Shown one piece after another: positions 78 to 14,162 of a DNA stretch of 64,000 nucleotides. A model generated the notes under the pieces. The model had not been told where the DNA came from, did not search any database, and worked only from the letters and a program-made list of their open reading frames with translations. Within the stretch, counting starts at the first letter, position 1. Each line of letters starts with the position of its first letter. The position numbers and the translations under genes are program-made. Location: positions 62,001 through 126,000 of the IMG/VR virus record IMGVR_UViG_3300046092_000062; one strand, written 5' to 3'.

Positions 78-249
78 AAATTTCATATCCTGTACGAACG
101 GCAGCTCTTGCTTTTCAGGATAATCTCGTGTAAAATGTTTAACACAAGAGAAGCTCTTAGCATCGGAATAAGTTCCGTTGCCGAGTTTAAGTAATTCATC
201 GAATCCAGGATTGGGTTTGCTCATACTGTATTTAACACAAGGAAACAAA

Positions 250-753
250 ATGCCCTGGATCCAAAACGTAGCACGTAGCGATGTCACTAAAGGGTTTCAC
301 ATCAACCCCGGTGATAACGCTATGTTGATTCAAATCGTTGACTGCGGCAGCGAATTTCCTACTCCCCTTTACAAGTTTAAAGAAGCTCATCAATTTGAGT
401 TTTTAGATGTAGAGGAAAAGGACTACGTTCTTGAAGAAGAAATGAAGTGCAGTCACGAACAAGCCGCAGAGCTAGTTCGTTTGTTGCAACATGCACTAGA
501 GAATCGCATGAACGTTATTGTTCATTGCCATGCTGGTGTTTGCCGCAGCGGTGCAGTATGTGAAGTTGGAGTCATGCTTGGCTTTGATGACACTGAAGCA
601 TTTCGTGCTCCTAACTTGCTAGTCAAGCATCGCATGATGAAGCAGCTGGGTTGGACGTATGATGAGAACGAAGAGCCAACGATCAATGGTCAACCATATC
701 AATACAGCGCAGGCGGGATCATTTTACCCCCAAGTCACGAAGGTGATATTTAA
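250..753 (+). CDS. Cys-dependent protein tyrosine/dual-specificity phosphatase
   Basis: HC-x5-R active-site loop VHCHAGVCRSG; start moved to ATG 250 after AAGGA RBS. Confidence 0.8.
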   Translation: MPWIQNVARSDVTKGFHINPGDNAMLIQIVDCGSEFPTPLYKFKEAHQFEFLDVEEKDYVLEEEMKCSHEQAAELVRLLQHALENRMNVIVHCHAGVCRSGAVCEVGVMLGFDDTEAFRAPNLLVKHRMMKQLGWTYDENEEPTINGQPYQYSAGGIILPPSHEGDI

Positions 754-1927: not shown

Positions 1928-2002
1928 GGGGGTATAACTTAGCGGCTAAAGTATCTGGCTTTTAACCAGAGAACCAGAGTTCGATTCTCTGTGCCCCTAC
2001 CA
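1928..2002 (+). tRNA. tRNA-Lys(TTT)
   Basis: TCTGG-ctTTTaa-CCAGA anticodon arm, T-arm, CCA. Confidence 0.92.
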
Positions 2003-2127
2003 TATCAAAGTACGCTAGTGCATTATAGTGAATCAGGTCGCTCCTGTGGAAGCTAAAACTGCATCAATTGCCCTGGAGGGAAAGGTCGACGGCTGCGGTT
2101 CGATTCCGTAGCGTACTTTGATATGGT
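1999..2127 (+). ncRNA. long-stem tRNA-like element A
   Basis: Perfect 19-bp inverted repeat 1999-2017/2109-2127 with T-arm GCGG-TTCGATT-CCGT abutting the 3' strand. Confidence 0.55.
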
Positions 2128-2134
2128 AAGGCAT

Positions 2135-2509: not shown

Positions 2510-2642
2510 GTGCAAAAGTAATAAAGGGACTTGGGTGCCCAGAGTTTTGAAAACTCACACACTATAGTCGGCATGTGTGTCCACCGTGCATTAACCGACG
2601 TTTAAATAAAGCTAGGGCAAGCGCCAGTTAACGGTGGAGCCT

Positions 2643-2756
2643 ATATAGAAGTATTCTTGGCATAAGTCAAAGCGGGAGAAGAAGCCTAGTATCTGCAGAT
2701 GCGAAAGTTTCAGAGCTTGACTCCTCCTATGCTTGCATTTGAGAGTGCTTCTATAT
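2643..2756 (+). ncRNA. long-stem element D
   Basis: 16-bp stem 2643-2658/2741-2756 (3 G-U) followed by GGTA like elements A and B. Confidence 0.4.
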
Positions 2757-2857
2757 GGTATAGTGTAATGCGAATGCACGGGATCGCCACATAAGCCTTT
2801 GACGAGCGGTGGAACAAGGTTCAGGTGTGGTAGGAACCCACAATGCCATTTAAATTT

Positions 2858-2933
2858 GCCTTTATAGCTCAGTTGGTAGAGCAGAGGATTGAAAATCCTT
2901 GTGTCACTGGTTCGAATCCGGTTAGAGGCACCA
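2858..2933 (+). tRNA. tRNA-Phe(GAA)
   Basis: Canonical cloverleaf, ttGAAaa loop, CCA. Confidence 0.95.
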
Positions 2934-2948
2934 AATTATAGGAGTAGT

Positions 2949-4172
2949 ATGGCAAAGTTTTCGGAGAAGTTCTTCTGTCCTGCACCGTGGACAATGTTAT
3001 ACTATCATGCCAACTCTCCTAGTCCGTGCCACATGATTAAAAATTTAGAGATGGAAGCGACCCCATCTGAATATTTTAATAGCGAATGGCTTAAGAATAT
3101 AAAACAAGAAATGCAGCAAGGGATTGTTCCTGCTGCATGTTCTGGTTGTAAAGAGCGTGAGAGTCATGGACTAAAAAGCACACGCGGCGCTATTTGGAAT
3201 TACTATAATGTAGGACCTGAGCCCGAGTACGAAGATCAATGGTTCGCAAACAAGTTTACCGCAGACAGCCCAACCGTTCCAAAAAGAATTGAGCTTAGGT
3301 TTAGTAATCTATGTAATATGAAATGCAGGATGTGCGACGAAACATCTAGTTCCAGCTTTGCAGCAGAAAAAATTGAACATAAGATTAAACCAGACAAAAA
3401 CGGAAGTCATCTTGAGCATAGCGTGATACCCATCACAAAGATAGAAAACAATTCAATTGATGGCCTCATGGATACTGCCTTTCTAGCGTCAGTTCGAAAG
3501 GTATGTTTAACCGGTGGCGAACCATTTTTAATAAAAGAATATTACAGCTATCTAGATTACTTAATAGACAACGGTTTTAACAAAACACTAGACGTAGAAT
3601 TGTTTACAAATTGCAGTGTATATAATCCATTGTTTATTGATCGACTTAGTAAATTTAAAACAGTTCAAATGGTGATGAGCATCGATGCTGTGGGCAAAGC
3701 GGCTGAATATATTCGTAGTGGAACCGATTGGCCTAAAGTGGAAGCCAATGTGCTTCGACTAAATCAACTAGCAGCTCCATTTAAAATGGAAGTTACAACT
3801 GCCATATCTGCATACAGCCTAATGGACTTTGCAGAGACTGCACGATTTCTAATGAGGTTGTACACCGAAAACAACACCATTGGCGTAAAATGTTACAACG
3901 TAACTTCGCCTCCGGGTATGCACTTTAATAATCTGCCTAAGCCGTTGAGAATACAAGCAATAGATCAAATCGACAAGGCAGTAGAGATTCTAACAGCACC
4001 AAACTATTTGGTACTAGTTACAGAGTTGTTAAACGTGAAACACGCATTGACTACTTCGTCCCCGGATACACCACTGGCATTCTTTGACTATACTAAGAAG
4101 TACGACACCATTAGGGGAGAGTCGTTTGCGGAAGTGTTTTTAACATCTCCTGACAGCACAGATTACTTGTAA
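2949..4172 (+). CDS. radical SAM protein with Cys-rich (twitch/SPASM-like) N-terminus
   Basis: CNMKCRMC (CxxxCxxC), LTGGEPF motif; start moved to ATG 2949 after GGAG. Confidence 0.88.
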   Translation: MAKFSEKFFCPAPWTMLYYHANSPSPCHMIKNLEMEATPSEYFNSEWLKNIKQEMQQGIVPAACSGCKERESHGLKSTRGAIWNYYNVGPEPEYEDQWFANKFTADSPTVPKRIELRFSNLCNMKCRMCDETSSSSFAAEKIEHKIKPDKNGSHLEHSVIPITKIENNSIDGLMDTAFLASVRKVCLTGGEPFLIKEYYSYLDYLIDNGFNKTLDVELFTNCSVYNPLFIDRLSKFKTVQMVMSIDAVGKAAEYIRSGTDWPKVEANVLRLNQLAAPFKMEVTTAISAYSLMDFAETARFLMRLYTENNTIGVKCYNVTSPPGMHFNNLPKPLRIQAIDQIDKAVEILTAPNYLVLVTELLNVKHALTTSSPDTPLAFFDYTKKYDTIRGESFAEVFLTSPDSTDYL

Positions 4173-5271: not shown

Positions 5272-6183
5272 ATGCAACATAATTTTTTACCATGTAAATA
5301 TCCAATTATTTGTGCCCCGATGAATAGAGTGTCGGACGTTAAGCTAGCACTTGCAGTTCATAGAGCTGGGTGCTTGCCGAGCCTTGTGGTCCACAATCAT
5401 GATGAATCTGAATTAGCTAACGATGTGGCTAAGATTGTGAACGAAATGAAAGAGTTCACAGAGCTGTCGGGATCAAGCGATTTTATACTTGCACTTAGAT
5501 CAGATTTTTTATTAAAAGATACCAAGCTGCTCCCTGCGATGTTAAAGTACAGGCCTGCGTATGTTGAATTCTTTGACAATATTGATTGGTCTGACATAAA
5601 GGTGGTCAACCTTATTAAGCTGCTTAGAACATACAGAATTAAAATAATCTATAAAATACTTGCACCTAGAATATTGGGCAAGTTAGTGGAATTTGTTGAC
5701 GCTATTGACGTTAAGGGCCCTGATGCCGCTGCCCGTGTGAATACCACAACTACTACTAGTTTAGTAGATCGGATTAAGCAACTGAAATCCGCTAATCCAC
5801 ATTTGCACATTATTGCATCTGGTGGTATGTCATCGCAACAGGATGTGCAGGCATGTATTGACGCTGGCGCAAGTGCAGTGGCATTGGGCACAGTATTTGC
5901 CATGTCAGAAGAGTCGTCGATTTCAGTTGAGACAAAAATGAAAATGATTGAATCAACATTCTCACAAGTTGTGAACATTGGCGAAGCCCAACAAAATGCG
6001 TTAGTGTTTACAAACGAAAAAGATGTTGACGGCAACCACACTGTGGGACTAGAACTTGGTATAAAAAGCCCAGTCGCTGGTCATGTGTTTGTGGGGAAAG
6101 CAATTGATTCAATTGACTCAATTAAAACAGTGGAAACAATCGTGTCGGAGCTAACTGGGGTAACTGATGCAAAAACCCGATGA
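5272..6183 (+). CDS. nitronate monooxygenase / FabK-like FMN TIM-barrel oxidoreductase
   Basis: YPIICAPM N-terminus, IIASGGM and AVALGTVF FMN-binding motifs. Confidence 0.75.
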   Translation: MQHNFLPCKYPIICAPMNRVSDVKLALAVHRAGCLPSLVVHNHDESELANDVAKIVNEMKEFTELSGSSDFILALRSDFLLKDTKLLPAMLKYRPAYVEFFDNIDWSDIKVVNLIKLLRTYRIKIIYKILAPRILGKLVEFVDAIDVKGPDAAARVNTTTTTSLVDRIKQLKSANPHLHIIASGGMSSQQDVQACIDAGASAVALGTVFAMSEESSISVETKMKMIESTFSQVVNIGEAQQNALVFTNEKDVDGNHTVGLELGIKSPVAGHVFVGKAIDSIDSIKTVETIVSELTGVTDAKTR

Positions 6184-9469: not shown

Positions 9470-10105
9470 ATGGGGACCAAGTGGTCCGCGGTTGAAAAAC
9501 AGAATTACATGGCTAACCCTTTTATGAATACATTAACGTTTCAGACCCCGGTACGTATAGTTAATAACTGGGATAAAACCACACAAGTAGCAAAGCACTG
9601 CATCGATCTAGTAAAGAGTCAATCGGCCAGTATCACTAGGGAATACAAGTACAGCGATTACGGATATCACTATGAACTAGGATCAACTGGCACAGTTAGT
9701 CACATCACTAACGGTAGTGCAGAATGGTATTCAGTGACTGGTAAGCTAATAGAATCTACCATGCGCTTTTTGCCGCTAATGCTAGATGACCTAGCAGACC
9801 TTGACCCTACGTTTGCTAGCATTAACTACATGGTGGGCAATGGCGCAGAGCATAGGGATCACGAAAGTCAGCAAACTGGGTTCAATTATTTTTTTGCTGA
9901 TTGTGACAGCACTACCTACGCAAGAAACGCAGACATCTGCGAATCCTATCCTAGCGTAAAAGACACAGGGTGGATCCTTGATATCCAACAACTACACAGC
10001 ATCTCAAATACAAACGAACGCATTTGGTTTAACCTTAGATTTGGTAAACCCTTTGCATATTGCAGAGATTGGTTTGCAGATCATTTGGTATTAACTTATG
10101 AATAA
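9470..10105 (+). CDS. hypothetical, possible 2OG-Fe(II)/cupin oxygenase
   Basis: HRD...LHS facial-triad-like spacing. Confidence 0.5.
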   Translation: MGTKWSAVEKQNYMANPFMNTLTFQTPVRIVNNWDKTTQVAKHCIDLVKSQSASITREYKYSDYGYHYELGSTGTVSHITNGSAEWYSVTGKLIESTMRFLPLMLDDLADLDPTFASINYMVGNGAEHRDHESQQTGFNYFFADCDSTTYARNADICESYPSVKDTGWILDIQQLHSISNTNERIWFNLRFGKPFAYCRDWFADHLVLTYE

Positions 10106-11273
10106 AATTATCTCAATTGAGCCTGCAATCGATCCAGTCAATCGTCCTACATTTTTGTTGGACTGGGAACTAACAATGAAGTGCAATTTGGATTGCGACT
10201 ACTGCTCGACTGGCATTGAGTACGGTGGTCACGACAACAGCACAGCACATCCTCCTAAAGACGAATGCTTAAAAACCATTGACTTCATGTTTGCTTATGC
10301 AGACAAGTACATGCAGCTAAAGCCCAAATGGCAGCGCATGGTGGTTCTCAATGTATACGGCGGCGAAAGTATATTTCATCCAGACATTGTTGAGATCCTA
10401 GAGCAGGTGCGAGCAAGACACACATACGATTGGCCATTGACTGTTACCTGCACAAGTAACGCAGTGGCTGGTAAGAATCTTTGGGAAAAGGTTGCAAACT
10501 TAATTGATGAGTTTACCGTTAGTTTTCACAGCAGTGCATTGCCTAAACAGAGACAGCAAGTACTAGACAACATACTTTATAATAAGGCTATCGGCAGGCG
10601 CCAAAAGGTGGTGTTTGTGATGCACAACGATCCTGTTTTGTGGGATATTAGCCAACAAGCTATTGAGTTTTGTAAAACACACGATGTTAGGTATGTAGTT
10701 AAAGCAAACGACACCCCTACACCTCAGTGGCAGTATAACAAAGAACAGTTTATTTACTTTCAAGATTACTACAAGTCACGCACACCAGCTAAGAGTAGGG
10801 ATGCTCTAACAAAGGCGCTGGATGCAGTGGAAACTGACACAGTTGGCATGGGTAAGGTCGGTCGAGGTTGTTGTGGTGGCCGAAAGCTATGCACTAACCA
10901 AGACCTACAACACCCAACAGCCTTTGTACCACATGCAGATTTCATGGGTTGGAGTTGCAGTGTTAACTGGTACTTCTTGTACATTAAACAGATCAATGGC
11001 GATGTGTACACAAACAAGGATTGCCGTATGCGCTTTGATGGTACAGTTGGTCCAATTGGTAATTTGTCAAATGGTAATCTTATACTAGAACAAGTGCAGA
11101 AAAACATTGACAACAAAGCCATGCCTGTTATACAATGTGCTAGAACAAGATGTATATGCGGTTACTGTGCTCCAAAAGCGCAAGACCCAAAAGATTTTGA
11201 AGCTATTATGGATAAACACATAGTTGACAAGCAAGTCAAATTTGTTTATAATAACAGCTTAGATGATAAGTAA
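10098..11273 (+). CDS. radical SAM protein with Cys-rich C-terminus
   Basis: CNLDCDYC, YGGES; C-terminal CCGG..C, CSV, CARTRCICGYC. Confidence 0.88.
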   Translation: MNKIISIEPAIDPVNRPTFLLDWELTMKCNLDCDYCSTGIEYGGHDNSTAHPPKDECLKTIDFMFAYADKYMQLKPKWQRMVVLNVYGGESIFHPDIVEILEQVRARHTYDWPLTVTCTSNAVAGKNLWEKVANLIDEFTVSFHSSALPKQRQQVLDNILYNKAIGRRQKVVFVMHNDPVLWDISQQAIEFCKTHDVRYVVKANDTPTPQWQYNKEQFIYFQDYYKSRTPAKSRDALTKALDAVETDTVGMGKVGRGCCGGRKLCTNQDLQHPTAFVPHADFMGWSCSVNWYFLYIKQINGDVYTNKDCRMRFDGTVGPIGNLSNGNLILEQVQKNIDNKAMPVIQCARTRCICGYCAPKAQDPKDFEAIMDKHIVDKQVKFVYNNSLDDK

Positions 11274-11284
11274 TTTATCACAAT

Positions 11285-11368
11285 GCGTAAGTGGTGGAAT
11301 GGTATACACTCTGGTCTTAGAAGCCAGCGCCGCGAGGATTGAGAGTTCGAGTCTCTCCTTACGCACCA
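11285..11368 (+). tRNA. tRNA-Leu(TAG)
   Basis: Variable arm, ctTAGaa loop, A73-CCA. Confidence 0.93.
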
Positions 11369-11398
11369 TTTATTATTTTAAGTTTTTCTAAAAAGTGC

Positions 11399-11464
11399 TT
11401 GACACTTAATGAAACTCTTGTTATAATAGATACATGTTAAGAAATTAACAAACGTTCTTTAAAA
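11399..11464 (+). promoter_or_regulatory. consensus sigma70 promoter plus boxA-like antitermination site
   Basis: TTGACA(11399)-17-TATAAT(11422); CGTTCTTTAAAA at 11453-11464 resembles rrn boxA TGCTCTTTAACA. Confidence 0.8.
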
Positions 11465-11465
11465 A

Positions 11466-11750
11466 TTTGTTTTGATGTAAAGTAAGCAGGCGTACCACGC
11501 TAATAGGTTGCGTGACTCTTGTCGAAAATTTGGTCCAGATAGAAAGCTGGGAACTCTTGAGTAGTCTGTAAGCGGCTACTGTGGCGTCTAACACCTATGA
11601 GTTAGAAACGATCTGTTCCACGTAGCAATACGCAGGAAGAATGATTGCAATAGAGTAGAGTAACGCTCTACCGGTTGCATGAGGGTCAACTGAAAGACGC
11701 AAGTCTTACCCGTTACCTTGTAACCAGGTAAAAAGAGGCATCAAAATAAA
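11466..11750 (+). ncRNA. unidentified multi-hairpin ncRNA (285 nt)
   Basis: 12-bp closing stem 11466-11477/11739-11750; at least 6 internal hairpins, several with GNRA loops; no ORF. Confidence 0.6.
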
Positions 11751-11764
11751 TTTCTAAATAACTG

Positions 11765-11838
11765 TTGACAGCAAATGAAAAGTTTGCTACAATAGCAGCT
11801 TAGTTAGACATTGTGCTAACTAACAAAGTTCTTTAAAA
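11765..11838 (+). promoter_or_regulatory. sigma70 promoter plus boxA-like site
   Basis: TTGACA(11765)-17-TACAAT(11788); AGTTCTTTAAAA at 11827-11838. Confidence 0.8.
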
Positions 11839-11855
11839 TAGATACGTATAAGAAG

Positions 11856-11970
11856 TTCTTATACACATGCACATAAATGCGTAGGCCACGCAGATATGGT
11901 TGGATTCATAGCTTGGGCTATTGCCCAGGTTGGCAGGTTCGAAACCTGTGAGTGTGCAGTTGTATAAGAA
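11856..11970 (+). ncRNA. long-stem tRNA-like element E
   Basis: TTCTTATACA/TGTATAAGAA and TGCACAT/GTGTGCA stems, T-arm GCAGG-TTCGAAA-CCTGT, D-like and variable-like hairpins, no CCA. Confidence 0.5.
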
Positions 11971-11974
11971 TTTA

Positions 11975-12875
11975 GGGCAGTTTAATGTCCTGCAAAGAGT
12001 ATGGTTCGCCCAGCTTGATGCGAAGAATAACTGTGGTGACACAGCCAAAGGAGGTATGCCTACATAACTCCGCTAGCAATAGTTCATTTAGACAAGCCTG
12101 CTCACTCCTGTGAGGGAGCGTTCACTCAGCGACGGGTGGATGTAACAGTGACGCAAAGTGCATAGGGAAGAACGTTTGCTTACAAGCCTGAGATTGCATC
12201 AAGGGGAACTTGAGTAGATGGAAAGTAACAGGTGGTGCTGACTTCTATGCGAAACCAACTTTGTTAATTGGTATGAGAAAGGGTAGTGTATTGGTTCGAA
12301 GGGTTGCACCTAAGAGCTCGTATGCAGTTTTAGTGGTTGGTGGACGTAGTAATACGAACATTGGTCGCAAAAGACGACTGAGTAGCTCGCAAGGCAAAAG
12401 GTACGTGGTGTGTTGTATTGTGTATTCCAAAAGATTATGCAGCAACTGAGTCAGCACATCGCAGTAGGTTGATATAGTTCATTGGTAGAACATCTGTCTC
12501 TTAAACAGAATGCGGTGGGTTCAATTCCCACTATCATTACAAAACGCAAAGACTGACTCGGTCGTATGTGAAAAGCATCTAATACTTGAGCCGCAAGGTA
12601 ATCAAGTCAGACGTAACTCGCAAGGTGAAATCTGTTTATGCAGGAAGTTTCGTAGCTACTTAGCGGTGGTGAATGGCTCTAAAGGTCAACGGGATAGAAA
12701 GCGTAGAATAGCATACGGCGACAAGACTACTGCCTGTCTTTAAAAACGGCGATGCTGACAGCAGACTAGACTACTATGCAAATAGGGTTTAGTGGAAGTC
12801 GGAAGAAAGTAGACTCGCAAGGTTTACAATAATGTCCGAGGTGTTGTTAGGTTAGGATGTATTCTCAGTCCGCCA
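11975..12875 (+). ncRNA. probable GOLLD large ncRNA (about 900 nt)
   Basis: ORF-free, GNRA (GCAA/GAAA) hairpin-rich, inside a phage tRNA cluster; segments such as GAAAGTAACAGGTGGTGCTGAC and 3' TATTCTCAG match my recollection of GOLLD; ends approximate. Confidence 0.65.
12468..12539 (+). tRNA. tRNA-Lys(CTT)-like module embedded in the large ncRNA, no CCA
   Basis: D-arm GTTC-attggta-GAAC, anticodon arm TCTGT-ctCTTaa-ACAGA, T-arm GTGGG-TTCAATT-CCCAC; weak acceptor, ends ACAA. Confidence 0.7.
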
Positions 12876-12969
12876 ACTTATATGCAAACACATTAGTAAA
12901 AGTCTGTAAAAGGACGAAGCAACTGACTCTGTAATAGGAGCTGTTTGCTCAGTGTGTTTACATATAAGT
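12876..12969 (+). ncRNA. long-stem element F
   Basis: ACTTATATG-C-AAACACATT / AGTGTGTTT-A-CATATAAGT, nearly the same stem as element B. Confidence 0.55.
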
Positions 12970-13056
12970 ATGCTTTGATGGTTAAAGTTGGATAGGTAGT
13001 GGGTAGCTTGTGAAATCATAGTAGCAAGTCCACAGCAACCCAAACGGTAGAAGCAG

Positions 13057-13129
13057 CTTATTTGAAAGCACATTTGTTCCTGAAAGATTTTACGGTTTGG
13101 ATGGTTCAGCAAATGTGTTTCCAAATAAG
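13057..13129 (+). ncRNA. long-stem element G
   Basis: CTTATTTG-A-AAGCACATTTG / CAAATGTGTTT-C-CAAATAAG. Confidence 0.5.
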
Positions 13130-13224
13130 AATTTGGTGATTGTGTGGAGCTAAGGCGATTCGCTGGACTATGAAGCACGACGAGAGCGTTGAACTTGAAA
13201 TAGGTTCAACCACCAGACTAATAT

Positions 13225-13300
13225 GGACGGTTGGCAGAGCGTTTATGCGCCGGATTGCAAACTCGGTATAAGGTAGGTTAGACTCCTACACCGTCCTCCA
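13225..13300 (+). tRNA. tRNA-Cys(GCA)
   Basis: ttGCAaa loop, T73-CCA; non-canonical T-loop TTAGACT. Confidence 0.85.
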
Positions 13301-13595
13301 TTTTTGCTAGTTTTTTAAAACTAGTTGTGACGTATGGAGATGAGAGATTGCACCTCTAGTTAGCACTTGACACGCTTACTGGAATATTAATCGTGATCCA
13401 GTGACCCGAGTCCCCTGGCTTAATTGCCTTGTTTGTTGACTCTCGGAAATATTGGTATCCTCTGCTTGTTGTATTTTGCTTTAGAAAACAGTTGCCTTGA
13501 AAATCAATTATATCTAATGTACATTGCACATTGTCCCGCAATTGACTTGCCATACGTTGCACCCCTATTAAAATCAAACAGAAAGGAACTCGATT

Positions 13596-14162
13596 ATGAA
13601 ATTTACACTTCGCAAAGCAAACGCCCTACAAAACACAATCCAGGAACACATCAAGACGATCGACATCGCATTGACGGTTTCCCTTAACGAGTTCCAAAGT
13701 TCAACTTCGGTGCTTGGTACCGCACGTGAGACATTGGTCCGCAACGATGCCAAGCGCACACAGTTGACCAAGGCCTTGTACGCAGTCCGTGCAAAGGTTG
13801 GTCGCGCCAACACAGAAGCCGGTGTTGCAGATCTGTTGACAGACGCTGCATTCATTGACAAGCGTTTGGGCTTCTTAAAAGGCCTAACTGAAAGCAAGGT
13901 TGTCGAAGAAATCGCAGTCATTGAAGGCAAGCTAGAAAAGCTTCGCGCACAAGACAACAAGAACCGTGTTTACGGTTACAACGACACAGTTGACACTGGT
14001 GTGCTTGAAGCGGACCAGATTGAAGGTTACAAGGCAGAAATGCGTGACCTGAAGAAACAAAAGCAAAGCATTAATGACAAGGTCCTGGAACTTAACGTTC
14101 GCACCGAGATTGAGTTGGATGCAGATACCGTTTCTTTGCTACAGGCAGAGCAACTGGTATAA
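13596..14162 (+). CDS. hypothetical coiled-coil protein
   Basis: 188-aa ORF, AAAGGA RBS, strong codon bias. Confidence 0.75.
   Translation: MKFTLRKANALQNTIQEHIKTIDIALTVSLNEFQSSTSVLGTARETLVRNDAKRTQLTKALYAVRAKVGRANTEAGVADLLTDAAFIDKRLGFLKGLTESKVVEEIAVIEGKLEKLRAQDNKNRVYGYNDTVDTGVLEADQIEGYKAEMRDLKKQKQSINDKVLELNVRTEIELDADTVSLLQAEQLV

What the first reader, a model, noticed from the sequence alone, without database searches (positions are those of the whole stretch)
11975..12875. Probable GOLLD RNA carrying an internal CCA-less tRNA-Lys(CTT) and ending in GCCA
Seen: about 900 ORF-free structured nt; a near-complete cloverleaf at 12468-12539 lies inside it with a weakened acceptor and ACAA end; the RNA ends ...CTCAGTCCGCCA followed by long-stem element F, like the tRNAs upstream. 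Known: GOLLD RNAs are giant phage ncRNAs of unknown function next to tRNA arrays; I recall tRNA insertions in their variable region, so novelty may be limited. Inference: the module is either excised or displayed as a decoy for tRNA-Lys nucleases.
Basis: partly seen in the sequence, partly recalled or inferred. Interest (0 to 1): 0.62.

Follow-up and report, generated by a model that had tools for sequence, protein, structure and literature searches.

The report
Phage GOLLD RNA with tethered pseudo-tRNA
This stretch of a freshwater jumbo-phage genome encodes a roughly 900-nt GOLLD RNA, a known cage-forming phage RNA of unknown function. A tRNA-Lys-shaped module sits in its internal linker and looks built to stay attached rather than to be released as a working tRNA. 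The case is a well-documented member of a known family, not a new kind of element.

Summary
Rfam GOLLD (RF02032) matches window 12405-12871 at 198.8 bits (cut-off 150). A covarying 5' domain (11975-12404) completes an ORF-free RNA of about 900 nt, and four freshwater metatranscriptomes carry it.

A tRNA-Lys(CUU) cloverleaf (12468-12539) lies in the GOLLD linker. The RNA ends in GCCA, followed by the same spacer hairpin that follows a free tRNA-Lys.

Embedded tRNAs in this linker are already published, so the basic finding is not new. I surveyed 79 related loci, which gave 57 cloverleaf modules.
- The module is inherited with the GOLLD scaffold.
- Its D, anticodon and T arms stay almost perfectly paired.
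- The top three acceptor pairs have decayed, and none encodes CCA (0/57, against 752/790 free tRNAs). The window's CAA stands where three outgroup GOLLDs have CCA.
- Anticodons vary, mostly Asn, Lys and Arg(UCU).
- One RNA-library contig spans the whole module with both flanks.

My reading is a permanently tethered pseudo-tRNA that, by homology, faces the cage lumen, and not an excised tRNA. A role as decoy for anticodon nucleases is possible but untested, and Lys is not the conserved identity.

Verdict: new member of a known kind, moderate interest.

The parts
11765..11793 (+). Sigma-70-like promoter (TTGACA, 17 nt, TACAAT, with an extended -10 TG). It predicts a primary transcript starting near 11800.
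   Evidence: Promoter scan, 11 of 12 matches. Member of a three-copy promoter repeat family at 1554, 11222 and 11763 (D3). Function is inferred.
11853..11973 (+). Structured leader or spacer element: a long closing stem (arms 11853-11873 / 11953-11973) around four small hairpins, one of them T-arm-like (GGTTCGAAACC). It appears to be removed from the mature RNA.
   Evidence: Inverted repeat I9. Fold -54.2 kcal/mol, z -7.0. No RNA-library contig depth at 11872-11955 in X11, X17 and X18 and 0.29 in X16, while GOLLD is deep. No tRNA or other Rfam hit.
11975..12404 (+). GOLLD 5' domain, the variable half that the Rfam model does not cover. It starts with the covarying hairpin GGGCA-GUUUAA-UGUCC (11975-11993).
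   Evidence: Conservation onset at 11975-12005. RNAalifold gives 108 pairs, 67 with compensatory changes. RNA contigs cover it, and Illumina adapter abuts 11980 in two runs.
12405..12462 (+). First hairpin of the Rfam GOLLD model. By inference from the literature's numbering of the linker as J13/15, this is P13.
   Evidence: Rfam alignment, model positions 1-59.
12468..12539 (+). Embedded tRNA-Lys(CUU)-shaped module: acceptor 12468-12474 / 12532-12538, anticodon CTT at 12500-12502, discriminator A at 12539. The D, anticodon and T arms are intact. The acceptor top is G.U plus a U x U mismatch.
   Evidence: ARAGORN and Rfam tRNA 64.3 bits. Cloverleaf parse. X11 contig 12448-12575 (1 mismatch) spans it with both flanks.
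12540..12555 (+). CAA standing at the CCA position (12540-12542), then the conserved A-rich junction AACGCAAAGACUG of the GOLLD linker.
   Evidence: Same spacing as ACCA-AACGCAAAG in three Verrucomicrobia-MAG GOLLDs. 0 of 57 clade modules keep CCA. The Rfam linker consensus covers this junction.
12541..12871 (+). Conserved GOLLD 3' domain, including the pseudoknot and the terminal 3-bp hairpin with loop UGUAUUCUCAG.
   Evidence: Rfam RF02032 alignment to model positions ~110-416. RNA contigs cover it.
12872..12875 (+). GCCA tail, a tRNA-like N-CCA 3' end. The mature 3' end is inferred to lie here.
   Evidence: CCA at the fixed offset +5 after TCTCA in 28 of 61 unique tails (window included), with a variable N (G or T). 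In L212, L169 and L186 a tRNA gene starts about 5 nt after it. RNA contig depth is zero from 12880 on, and one contig alignment ends at 12875.
12876..12969 (+).
   Evidence: Inverted repeats I21 and I7 and direct repeat D13. Fold -31.5 kcal/mol, z -4.1. Shared 14-mer. No RNA contig depth.
13225..13300 (+). tRNA-Cys(GCA) with encoded CCA, the next gene of the array. The order GOLLD then tRNA-Cys is shared with Caulobacter phage Magneto and L095.
   Evidence: ARAGORN. Magneto annotation.

Best explanation
Window ~11975-12875 (+) is a full-length GOLLD RNA (~900 nt) of a 320-kb freshwater jumbo phage that carries 48 tRNA genes.

Transcription and maturation. It is transcribed inside the tRNA array from a sigma-70-like promoter at 11765-11793. 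It appears to be cut out of a longer precursor: the structured spacers on both sides are lost. This leaves a 5' end at about 11975-11980 and a tRNA-style N-CCA 3' end at 12875.

Assembly (by homology). From the solved GOLLD cages (14-mer env-38, 12-mer S. agalactiae), it should assemble into a homo-oligomeric RNA cage whose linker points into the lumen.

The module. That linker is a tRNA-Lys(CUU)-shaped module that is part of the RNA and not a tRNA gene awaiting release. It keeps the D arm, anticodon arm, T arm and elbow under selection. It has lost what a tRNA needs to be processed and charged: a full 7-bp acceptor stem and CCA.

Most likely mechanism. Each cage displays a dozen or so tethered tRNA bodies inside. 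These serve as ligands for a tRNA-recognising partner, read mainly through the anticodon loop and the elbow. Capture or sequestration of a host tRNA-directed factor, such as an anticodon nuclease, is my preferred guess.

What is shown and what is inferred.
- Shown: GOLLD identity, architecture, conservation patterns, presence in RNA libraries, and contiguity of the module with its flanks.
- Inferred by homology: cage formation and lumen orientation.
- Inferred: the processing route, and the N-CCA tail as a 3'-end maturation or stability signal.
- Speculative (about 0.2): the identity of the partner.
For: Identity.
- RF02032 at 198.8 bits against a cut-off of 150, full length.
- 5' domain covariation: 67 of 108 pairs with compensatory changes.
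- The internal ORFs are not conserved.

Expression.
- RNA-library contigs from four freshwater metatranscriptome studies cover 11956-12879 at high depth.
- Depth is zero at 12880-13215 in all four runs. At 11872-11955 it is zero in three runs and 0.29 in X16.
- Illumina adapter abuts 11980 in two runs.

Retention of the module.
- X11 contig 12448-12575 (1 mismatch, depth 343) spans the whole module. X17 contig 12493-12586 spans its 3' junction.
- Across 57 parsed embedded modules, the T, anticodon and D stems average 4.9/5, 4.9/5 and 3.96/4 pairs.
- Acceptor pairs 1-72, 2-71 and 3-70 pair in only 53%, 40% and 58% of modules, and 5 of 57 have 7/7.
- CCA is encoded in 0 of 57.
- In 790 free tRNAs from the same loci and genome, every acceptor position pairs at 92-96% and CCA is encoded in 752.
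- In this genome 46 of 47 free tRNAs encode CCA.
- The window's A-CAA-AACGCAAAG matches A-CCA-AACGCAAAG of three outgroup GOLLDs, so CAA reads as a decayed CCA.

Inheritance with the scaffold.
- Module bodies are closer to modules with a different anticodon than to any free tRNA in 48 of 57 cases. The window (Lys) and L230 (Asn) bodies are 97.6% identical.
- Linker length is held to about 76-83 nt.

Literature.
- The linker is inside the cage, and tRNAs are sometimes in it (10.1101/2024.12.08.627333; PMC12990946).
- No free tRNA was detected from the pseudo-tRNA in a mycobacterial GOLLD (PMC6582537).

The 3' end.
- CCA at a fixed offset in 28 of 61 unique tails (window included), with variable neighbours. 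It is followed either by the tRNA-type spacer hairpin or directly by a tRNA.

Anticodons.
- Asn, Lys and Arg(UCU) make up 39 of 57 embedded modules against 87 of 893 free tRNAs.
Against: - The RNA evidence is from assembled contigs, which cannot show true ends, strand or the proportion cleaved. DNA carry-over in RNA libraries is possible.
- In run X18 the contigs break at exactly 12465/12469 and 12542.
- 'Joints' 12470->12541 appear in X16 and X17. These are probably relatives with another tRNA, but excision is not excluded.
- Cage formation and lumen orientation are taken from other GOLLDs and were not tested here.
- Some relatives have a non-tRNA linker (L225, L150, L135/L153, L097), so the module is dispensable for GOLLD as such.
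- The anticodon skew could reflect descent from an NUU ancestor and not selection. Unique sequences are not independent.
- The anticodon arm is not clearly more variable than the rest of the module.
- No partner protein is identified.
- The 17-nt anticodon stem-loop gave no clean host-mimicry signal.
Confidence: 0.6

Rival explanations
1. Pro-tRNA, or 'inhibited storage'. The module is a real tRNA-Lys(CUU) precursor. It is released by RNase P and a 3' endonuclease or exonuclease, then receives CCA from the host enzyme. This splits GOLLD into a 5' and a 3' RNA, perhaps when the cage opens.
For: - The cloverleaf scores as a tRNA (64.3 bits) with A73 and a canonical CUCUUAA loop.
- PMC12990946 proposes inhibited storage.
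- X18 contigs break at the module's borders, and joints skip 12471-12540.
- Three outgroup GOLLDs still have ACCA after the module.
Against: - The top of the acceptor is unpaired across the clade, and CCA is lost in 57 of 57 modules while free tRNAs keep both.
- The phage already has a free tRNA-Lys(CTT) and two tRNA-Lys(TTT) with CCA.
- No phage CCA-adding enzyme was found.
- Contigs span the junctions.
- No free tRNA was seen in the mycobacterial case (PMC6582537).
- Several modules have degenerate D or T loops yet intact anticodon arms (the L172/L126/L176 group).
Confidence: 0.12
2. Evolutionary relic. A tRNA gene was once captured in the tolerant linker of a GOLLD living in a tRNA array, and it now persists as a neutral spacer with no function of its own.
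For: - The CCA and acceptor top have decayed.
- The anticodon drifts among single-step neighbours GUU, CUU, UUU, UCU and UGU.
- Some relatives have short non-tRNA linkers.
- Solved GOLLDs lack a tRNA (10.1101/2024.12.08.627333).
Against: - The D, anticodon and T stems stay at 98-99% paired despite sequence turnover.
- The loop frame C32-U33...A37-A38 is kept in 36 of 57 modules.
- Linker length is constrained to about 76-83 nt.
- The module is present at the same place in about 85% of unique linkers (57 parsed cloverleaves plus 4 degenerate ones with intact anticodon arms, of 69). Decay is confined to the acceptor end.
Confidence: 0.15
3. Purely architectural role. The L-shaped module is a rigid strut or folding nucleus. 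It sets the distance between the 5' cap domain and the 3' belt domain, or fills the lumen, with no ligand.
For: - Tight linker-length constraint and a conserved elbow (G18G19 and T loop).
- The 5' and 3' domains are separate bodies joined by the linker (10.1101/2024.12.08.627333).
Against: - The linker is unresolved, and so flexible, in the solved cages.
- The tethers on both sides of the module are single-stranded.
- The canonical U-turn anticodon loop is conserved although it has no obvious structural contact. No codon-like site in GOLLD covaries with the anticodon.
Confidence: 0.12
4. Two independent RNAs flank an ordinary tRNA gene, so there is no single GOLLD transcript.
For: The tRNA sits at a domain boundary. 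The S. agalactiae 3' domain alone can oligomerise (PMC12990946).
Against: - The Rfam model spans the tRNA (positions 1-59 before it, the rest after) in one hit.
- There is no promoter or terminator between the parts.
- A contig spans the module and both flanks.
- The same arrangement holds in about 80 relatives.
Confidence: 0.03

Closest known systems
GOLLD RNA (Rfam RF02032; Weinberg et al. 2009; cryo-EM env-38 14-mer 9MEE, S. agalactiae 12-mer 9L0R)
   Same: Full-length match above the gathering score. Conserved 3' domain plus a variable, structured 5' domain.
   Different: - The 5' domain is not covered by any model, so its homology to the published P1-P12 was not tested.
- In this jumbo-phage sub-clade the RNA ends in a conserved N-CCA and is bracketed by tRNA-type spacer hairpins. 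I did not find this described in the papers I could read.
- Phage Phosso and Caulobacter phage Magneto end their GOLLDs with terminator hairpins instead.
Embedded tRNA or pseudo-tRNA in the GOLLD linker J13/15 (Mycolicibacterium tRNA-Phe, PMC12990946 citing Morgado 2020; M. aubagnense pseudo-tRNA, PMC6582537; 'sometimes present in the linker', Kretsch et al.)
   Same: A tRNA cloverleaf at the same place in the linker. It is expected to point into the cage. In the mycobacterial case it is not seen as a free tRNA.
   Different: - Here the anticodon is Lys(CUU).
- The clade survey adds that the module is inherited with the scaffold and switches anticodon.
- It has lost its CCA and the top of its acceptor stem.
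ROOL RNA
   Same: A large phage or prophage RNA near tRNA islands that forms a cage with a lumen-facing variable linker.
   Different: Unrelated sequence and fold. No Rfam ROOL hit in the window.
tRNA-like domains built into larger RNAs (tmRNA tRNA-like domain; plant-virus 3' tRNA-like structures; MALAT1 mascRNA)
   Same: tRNA mimicry is used inside a bigger RNA, and the GOLLD 3' N-CCA recalls the CCA ends of such RNAs. This comparison is from general knowledge.
   Different: - tmRNA and viral tRNA-like structures keep a chargeable acceptor and CCA but lack a normal anticodon arm. This module is the reverse: a full anticodon arm and a disabled acceptor.
- mascRNA is excised by RNase P and RNase Z. 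Here excision is disfavoured.
Phage tRNAs that counter tRNA-cleaving defences (T5 tRNA-Lys against PARIS; SP15 tRNA-Lys against PrrC; tRNA-Tyr against retron-Eco7; PMC11555353, PMC10264068)
   Same: A phage investing in Lys-type (and Asn and Arg-type) anticodon loops. [quoted passage not shown]
   Different: Those are free, functional replacement tRNAs. This module cannot plausibly be charged, so it could only act as bait or decoy. No link to any nuclease was tested.

Membership tests
GOLLD RNA (RF02032) | Covariance-model score at or above the curated gathering score over the full model | tested here: met
   198.8 bits against 150, model 1-416 of 416, E 1.3e-54. Same hit in the whole record.
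GOLLD RNA (RF02032) | Conserved 3' domain with its pseudoknot and terminal hairpin | tested here: met
   The Rfam alignment shows the pseudoknot strands and helices aligned, with few non-canonical pairs flagged.
GOLLD RNA (RF02032) | Large, structured but variable 5' domain, giving a total length of about 700-900 nt | tested here: met
   11975-12404 is conserved among relatives. 108 consensus pairs, 67 with compensatory changes. Homology to the published P1-P12 was not tested because no model covers it.
GOLLD RNA (RF02032) | Phage or prophage location next to tRNA genes | tested here: met
   320-kb IMG/VR virus record with 48 tRNAs and one tmRNA. GOLLD lies between tRNA-Leu and tRNA-Cys.
GOLLD RNA (RF02032) | Accumulates as a stable RNA | tested here: inconclusive
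   RNA-library contigs from four studies cover 11956-12879, and the flanks have no or almost no depth. Contigs cannot prove strand, ends or RNA origin.
GOLLD RNA (RF02032) | Homo-oligomeric cage with the linker in the lumen | not testable with these tools
   Known for env-38 and S. agalactiae GOLLD only (10.1101/2024.12.08.627333; PMC12990946).
Functional tRNA gene (RF00005, tRNA-Lys) | Cloverleaf recognised by tRNA models, with anticodon CUU and A73 | tested here: met
   Rfam tRNA 64.3 bits. ARAGORN calls Lys(ctt).
Functional tRNA gene (RF00005, tRNA-Lys) | Seven-pair acceptor stem | tested here: not met
   G1.U72, U2xU71, then five pairs. Across the clade the top three pairs hold in 40-58% of modules, against 92-96% in free tRNAs.
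Functional tRNA gene (RF00005, tRNA-Lys) | 3' CCA encoded, as in the genome's other tRNAs, or evidence that it is added | tested here: not met
   CAA at 12540-12542. 0 of 57 embedded modules encode CCA, against 752 of 790 free tRNAs. 46 of 47 free tRNAs in this genome encode CCA. No phage CCA-adding enzyme was found. Addition after cleavage was not testable.
Functional tRNA gene (RF00005, tRNA-Lys) | Released as a free ~75-nt RNA and aminoacylated | not testable with these tools
   Only contigs were available. One contig spans the module with both flanks.
   The module falls in the unpaired linker stretch of the model after its first hairpin (positions 1-59). It sits at the same offset in 57 of 69 unique relatives' linkers.
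Anticodon-nuclease decoy (hypothetical class) | Anticodon stem-loop that matches a host tRNA targeted by a host nuclease, with binding or cleavage by that nuclease | tested here: inconclusive
   The host is unknown. The 17-nt stem-loop occurs in ordinary tRNA-Lys(CTT) genes of only two MAGs, and in island tRNAs beside GOLLDs in five Verrucomicrobia MAGs. No nuclease test was possible.

The most novel reading that the evidence does not exclude
GOLLD cages act as multivalent, caged anticodon-loop baits. Each particle carries a dozen or so tethered, unchargeable tRNA bodies whose anticodon loop (Asn, Lys or Arg(UCU) in most relatives) tracks the specificity of the host's tRNA-cleaving defence. 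The cage soaks up or traps that nuclease, or another tRNA-directed defence protein, while the phage's own free tRNAs with diverged loops keep translation going. This would give GOLLD its first function. It would also explain why the module keeps its anticodon arm and elbow but has lost its acceptor end and CCA.
Probability: 0.12. Interest if true: 0.85.

Novelty: new member of a known kind. Interest (0 to 1): 0.4.

Why it matters
GOLLD is one of the largest bacterial and phage non-coding RNAs. Its cage structure was solved only recently, and it still has no known function.

This locus adds nothing new in kind. It does give a clean, expressed example together with a set of about 80 relatives. 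That set makes the 'what is the linker tRNA for' question concrete.
- The module is under selection for tRNA shape and for the anticodon-loop frame.
- It is not under selection for the features needed for processing or charging.
- Its anticodons cluster in the Asn, Lys and Arg(UCU) box.

This argues against the published 'stored tRNA' idea for this clade. It points experiments toward tRNA-binding partners.

The conserved N-CCA tail and the tRNA-type spacers also suggest that GOLLD borrows the host's tRNA end-maturation route. That helps anyone trying to express the native RNA.

Tried and rejected
1. Internal codon-like docking site. I scanned a 48-sequence full-length alignment for any column whose triplet matches each sequence's own codon. 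The best column held 20 sequences against a null maximum of 18, and inspection showed a clade-conserved GUAAC and not covariation. Rejected.

2. Host mimicry by the anticodon stem-loop. The exact 17-mer gave 23 hits in 185,579 species genomes. Two lie in ordinary tRNA-Lys(CTT) genes (Planctomycetaceae and Bdellovibrionales MAGs). Five lie in a free tRNA-Lys(CTT) with an odd UGCAAGU T loop on Verrucomicrobia MAG contigs, three of which were shown to carry a GOLLD-like hit on the same locus (two over the gathering score). So this is an island tRNA and not clearly a host one. GOLLD was found only in the centre genome among 151 genomes of that phylum sampled. Inconclusive; no host assigned.

3. 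Anticodon-arm hypervariability. The window and L230 share a 97.6% identical body with a wholly different anticodon arm. Averaged over pairs at 80-90% scaffold identity, however, the anticodon arm (0.76) is no more diverged than the body (0.745). Not claimed.

4. Coding potential. The three mechanical ORFs inside GOLLD stay open in 2-4 of 48 relatives. Rejected.

5. A tRNA, or any Rfam family, in the upstream element or in the upstream RNA (11360-12000): nothing at E <= 1 except a spurious rRNA match.

6. Phage-encoded CCA-adding enzyme, RtcB or RNA ligases (PF01743, PF01139, PF09414, PF09511): none in the 92%-complete record. The PF09511 control rang nowhere, so that search is uninformative.

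7. Pairing of the GOLLD 5' end or of the module's 5' acceptor strand with the 3' GCCA end, which would make a split acceptor: no complementarity by eye. Not pursued.

8. Morgado et al. 2020 (PMC7549688) could not be read.

The big protein searches, structure prediction and complex prediction were not needed and were not used.
Full report
**What is there**

The window is bases 62001-126000 of a 320,767-bp IMG/VR virus record, estimated 92% complete. A scan of all Rfam families gives one GOLLD hit (RF02032) at 12405-12871 on the + strand. It scores 198.8 bits against a gathering score of 150 and covers the full model 1-416. The same scan gives fifteen tRNA hits on the same strand (ARAGORN calls sixteen). 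ARAGORN calls it tRNA-Lys(ctt).

The whole record holds 48 tRNA genes and a tmRNA. 46 of its 47 free-standing tRNAs encode CCA. The embedded one is followed by CAA.

**Extent of the RNA**

The Rfam model covers only the conserved 3' half.
- Identity to eleven relatives rises from background to 50-100% at about 11975-12005 and stays high to 12405.
- RNAalifold on 16 relatives gives 108 consensus pairs in 11975-12404, 67 of them with compensatory changes. One is a first hairpin, GGGCA-GUUUAA-UGUCC, at 11975-11993.
- The three mechanical ORFs inside the region stay open in only 2-4 of 48 relatives.

**Transcription and ends**

A promoter-like site (TTGACA, 17 nt, TACAAT, with TG) lies at 11765-11793. 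It belongs to a three-copy promoter repeat. Between it and GOLLD lies a very stable element at 11853-11973 (-54.2 kcal/mol, z -7.0) with a T-arm-like hairpin. After GOLLD comes a long hairpin at 12876-12969 (-31.5 kcal/mol, z -4.1). The 14-mer that opens this hairpin is identical to the one directly following the CCA of the free tRNA-Lys(TTT) at 2213.

I laid contigs from four freshwater metatranscriptomes from four different studies on 11200-13700.
- Depth is high over 11956-12879.
- Depth is zero over 12880-13215 in all four runs. Over 11872-11955 it is zero in three runs and 0.29 in X16.
- Illumina adapter sequence abuts position 11980 in two runs. A third run shows a relative's end one base away.
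- One contig alignment stops at 12875.

Contigs cannot prove ends, strand or RNA origin. The pattern fits a mature RNA of about 11975/11980 to 12875, cut out of a longer precursor.

**The 3' tail**

Among 61 unique downstream tails of related GOLLDs, 28 (the window's included) have CCA at exactly the same offset after the terminal loop (GCCA or TCCA, with neighbouring bases varying). The CCA is followed either by the same family of spacer hairpin or, in three loci, directly by a tRNA gene about five bases later. More distant relatives have no CCA, and the two cultured phages (Phosso, Magneto) end with terminator hairpins.

I infer that in this sub-clade GOLLD is matured like a tRNA of the array. 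The duplex-plus-NCCA end would stop exonucleolytic trimming and could be repaired by the CCA-adding enzyme. This rests on general knowledge of bacterial stable-RNA 3' maturation and is not shown here.

**The embedded module in the window**

- Acceptor stem: G1.U72, U2xU71, then five Watson-Crick pairs.
- D stem 4/4, anticodon stem 5/5 and T stem 5/5.
- Anticodon loop CUCUUAA, T loop UUCAAUU, discriminator A.

**The embedded module across relatives**

Two pattern scans of IMG/VR, filtered with nhmmer, gave 81 GOLLD loci of the same clade. 79 have both linker anchors, giving 69 unique linkers, and 57 of those parse as cloverleaves.

| Feature | 57 embedded modules | 790 free tRNAs from the same loci and this genome |
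|---|---|---|
| T, anticodon and D stem pairs | 4.9/5, 4.9/5, 3.96/4 | not reported |
| Acceptor pairs 1-72, 2-71, 3-70 | 53%, 40%, 58% | 92-96% |
| Inner four acceptor pairs | 91-96% | 95-96% |
| Full 7/7 acceptor | 5 | 643 |
| CCA encoded | 0 | 752 |

- Three GOLLDs on Verrucomicrobia MAG contigs have A-CCA-AACGCAAAG where the window has A-CAA-AACGCAAAG. The window's CAA therefore reads as a decayed CCA.
- Linker length is mostly 76-83 nt.
- Module bodies are closer to modules with a different anticodon than to any free tRNA in 48 of 57 cases. The module is inherited with the scaffold, not repeatedly captured.
- Anticodons: GUU 20, CUU 9, UCU 5, UUU 5, UGA 4, and others including CUA and UUA. 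Asn, Lys and Arg(UCU) together make up 39 of 57, against 87 of 893 free tRNAs. These counts are not phylogenetically independent.
- Four unique linkers have degenerate D or T loops yet an intact Asn-type anticodon arm.
- A few relatives have short non-tRNA linkers.

**Excised or retained**

- For retention: an X11 contig (12448-12575, one mismatch) spans the whole module with both flanks, and an X17 contig spans its 3' junction.
- Against: in X18 contigs break at 12465/12469 and 12542, and 'joints' 12470->12541 occur in X16 and X17 with unknown content between.
- Co-occurring relatives carry different modules between identical flanks. One loose end shows an Asn-type module. Such breaks are therefore what an assembler would produce anyway.
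- Taken with the decayed acceptor and CCA, the redundancy with three free Lys tRNAs, and the published failure to detect a free tRNA from a mycobacterial GOLLD pseudo-tRNA (PMC6582537), I judge retention much more likely than excision.

**How it probably works**

Solved GOLLDs form 12- to 14-mer cages, with the unresolved linker placed in the lumen (10.1101/2024.12.08.627333; PMC12990946). By homology, this RNA would carry a dozen or so tethered tRNA bodies inside. Selection keeps the elbow and a canonical U-turn anticodon loop but not the acceptor end. That fits a ligand for something that reads tRNA shape and the anticodon loop.

A bait for host tRNA-directed defence nucleases is my preferred guess. 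[quoted passage not shown] I give this about 0.2. The alternatives are a neutral relic, an architectural strut, or a stored pro-tRNA.

**Comparison and novelty**

GOLLD itself, its place in phage tRNA arrays, and tRNAs in its linker are all published. This is a new member of a known kind.

I did not find the following in the papers available to me. No paper in the searchable library holds both 'GOLLD' and 'acceptor stem'.
- The clade-wide loss of CCA and of the acceptor top.
- The anticodon skew.
- The conserved N-CCA tail with tRNA-type spacers.

These are modest refinements, not a new category.

**Limits**

There are no raw reads, no known host and no structural test. Counts are of unique sequences and not of independent events. 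Morgado et al. 2020 could not be read.

Noticed in passing
window 11434-11760 (+): A second abundant RNA lies just upstream of GOLLD, behind a perfect TTGACA-17-TATAAT promoter (11399-11427). RNA-library contigs cover about 11456-11753 at depths similar to GOLLD in two runs. It folds at -94.4 kcal/mol, z -3.2. It has no Rfam match. It is conserved upstream of GOLLD in L095/L189 and L124, and weakly in L162. It may be an undescribed companion ncRNA.
   Followed up: partly
window 1995-2131, 2208-2283, 11853-11973, 12876-12969: The spacers of the tRNA array are long hairpins, some enclosing T-arm-like hairpins (GCGGTTCGATTCCG at 2095-2108, GGTTCGAAACC at 11938-11948). In two of them the 5' arm includes the CCA end of the preceding tRNA. 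They look like processing elements or decayed tRNAs.
   Followed up: partly
window 12470-12541 (RNA contigs of runs X16, X17): Contig 'joints' skip exactly the embedded module (70-71 nt), with unknown content between. Most likely these are relatives with a different module. A true module-less RNA form is not excluded.
   Followed up: no
G000:C1:58089-58161 (outside the window; L233 790-862): This is the only other CCA-less tRNA call in the phage genome, a tRNA-Ile(aat)-like cloverleaf (Rfam tRNA 51.6 bits). No other Rfam family lies around it.
   Followed up: partly
G000:C1:180876-181270 and 187515-187589 (outside the window): The phage record also encodes a tmRNA (tag ANDEQFLMVA) and a CUA-anticodon (amber-suppressor-type) tRNA with CCA.
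   Followed up: no
window 178-753, 1360-1749, 2889-4172, 5272-6183, 10098-11273: Protein genes interleaved with the tRNA array: a dual-specificity phosphatase-like protein, a 129-aa RF-1-domain protein (the size of a ribosome-rescue or peptidyl-tRNA hydrolase protein), two radical-SAM proteins and an NMO/IMPDH-like TIM-barrel protein. Possibly a translation or tRNA-modification island.
   Followed up: partly
L003 (Caulobacter phage Magneto JX100812.1) 2526-3012; L002 (Sinorhizobium phage Phosso PV764938.1) 2541-3009: Both cultured phages carry an unannotated GOLLD above the Rfam cut-off with a linker tRNA module. Magneto's record annotates only the embedded module, as 'tRNA-Lys'. A permuted tmRNA lies on the opposite strand just upstream. 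These are tractable systems for experiments.
   Followed up: partly
L238 1281-1752, L240 2694-3164, L241 88-558 (Verrucomicrobia MAG contigs): These GOLLDs have an embedded tRNA that still carries ACCA. Both the embedded tRNAs and the neighbouring free ones have an unusual UGCRA T loop in place of UUCRA. GOLLD was found only in the centre genome among 151 genomes of that phylum sampled.
   Followed up: partly
L147, L167 (embedded modules): Two embedded modules carry stop-codon-reading anticodons (CUA, UUA). Four carry UGA in a class-I body. One (L090) has an 8-nt anticodon loop.
   Followed up: no
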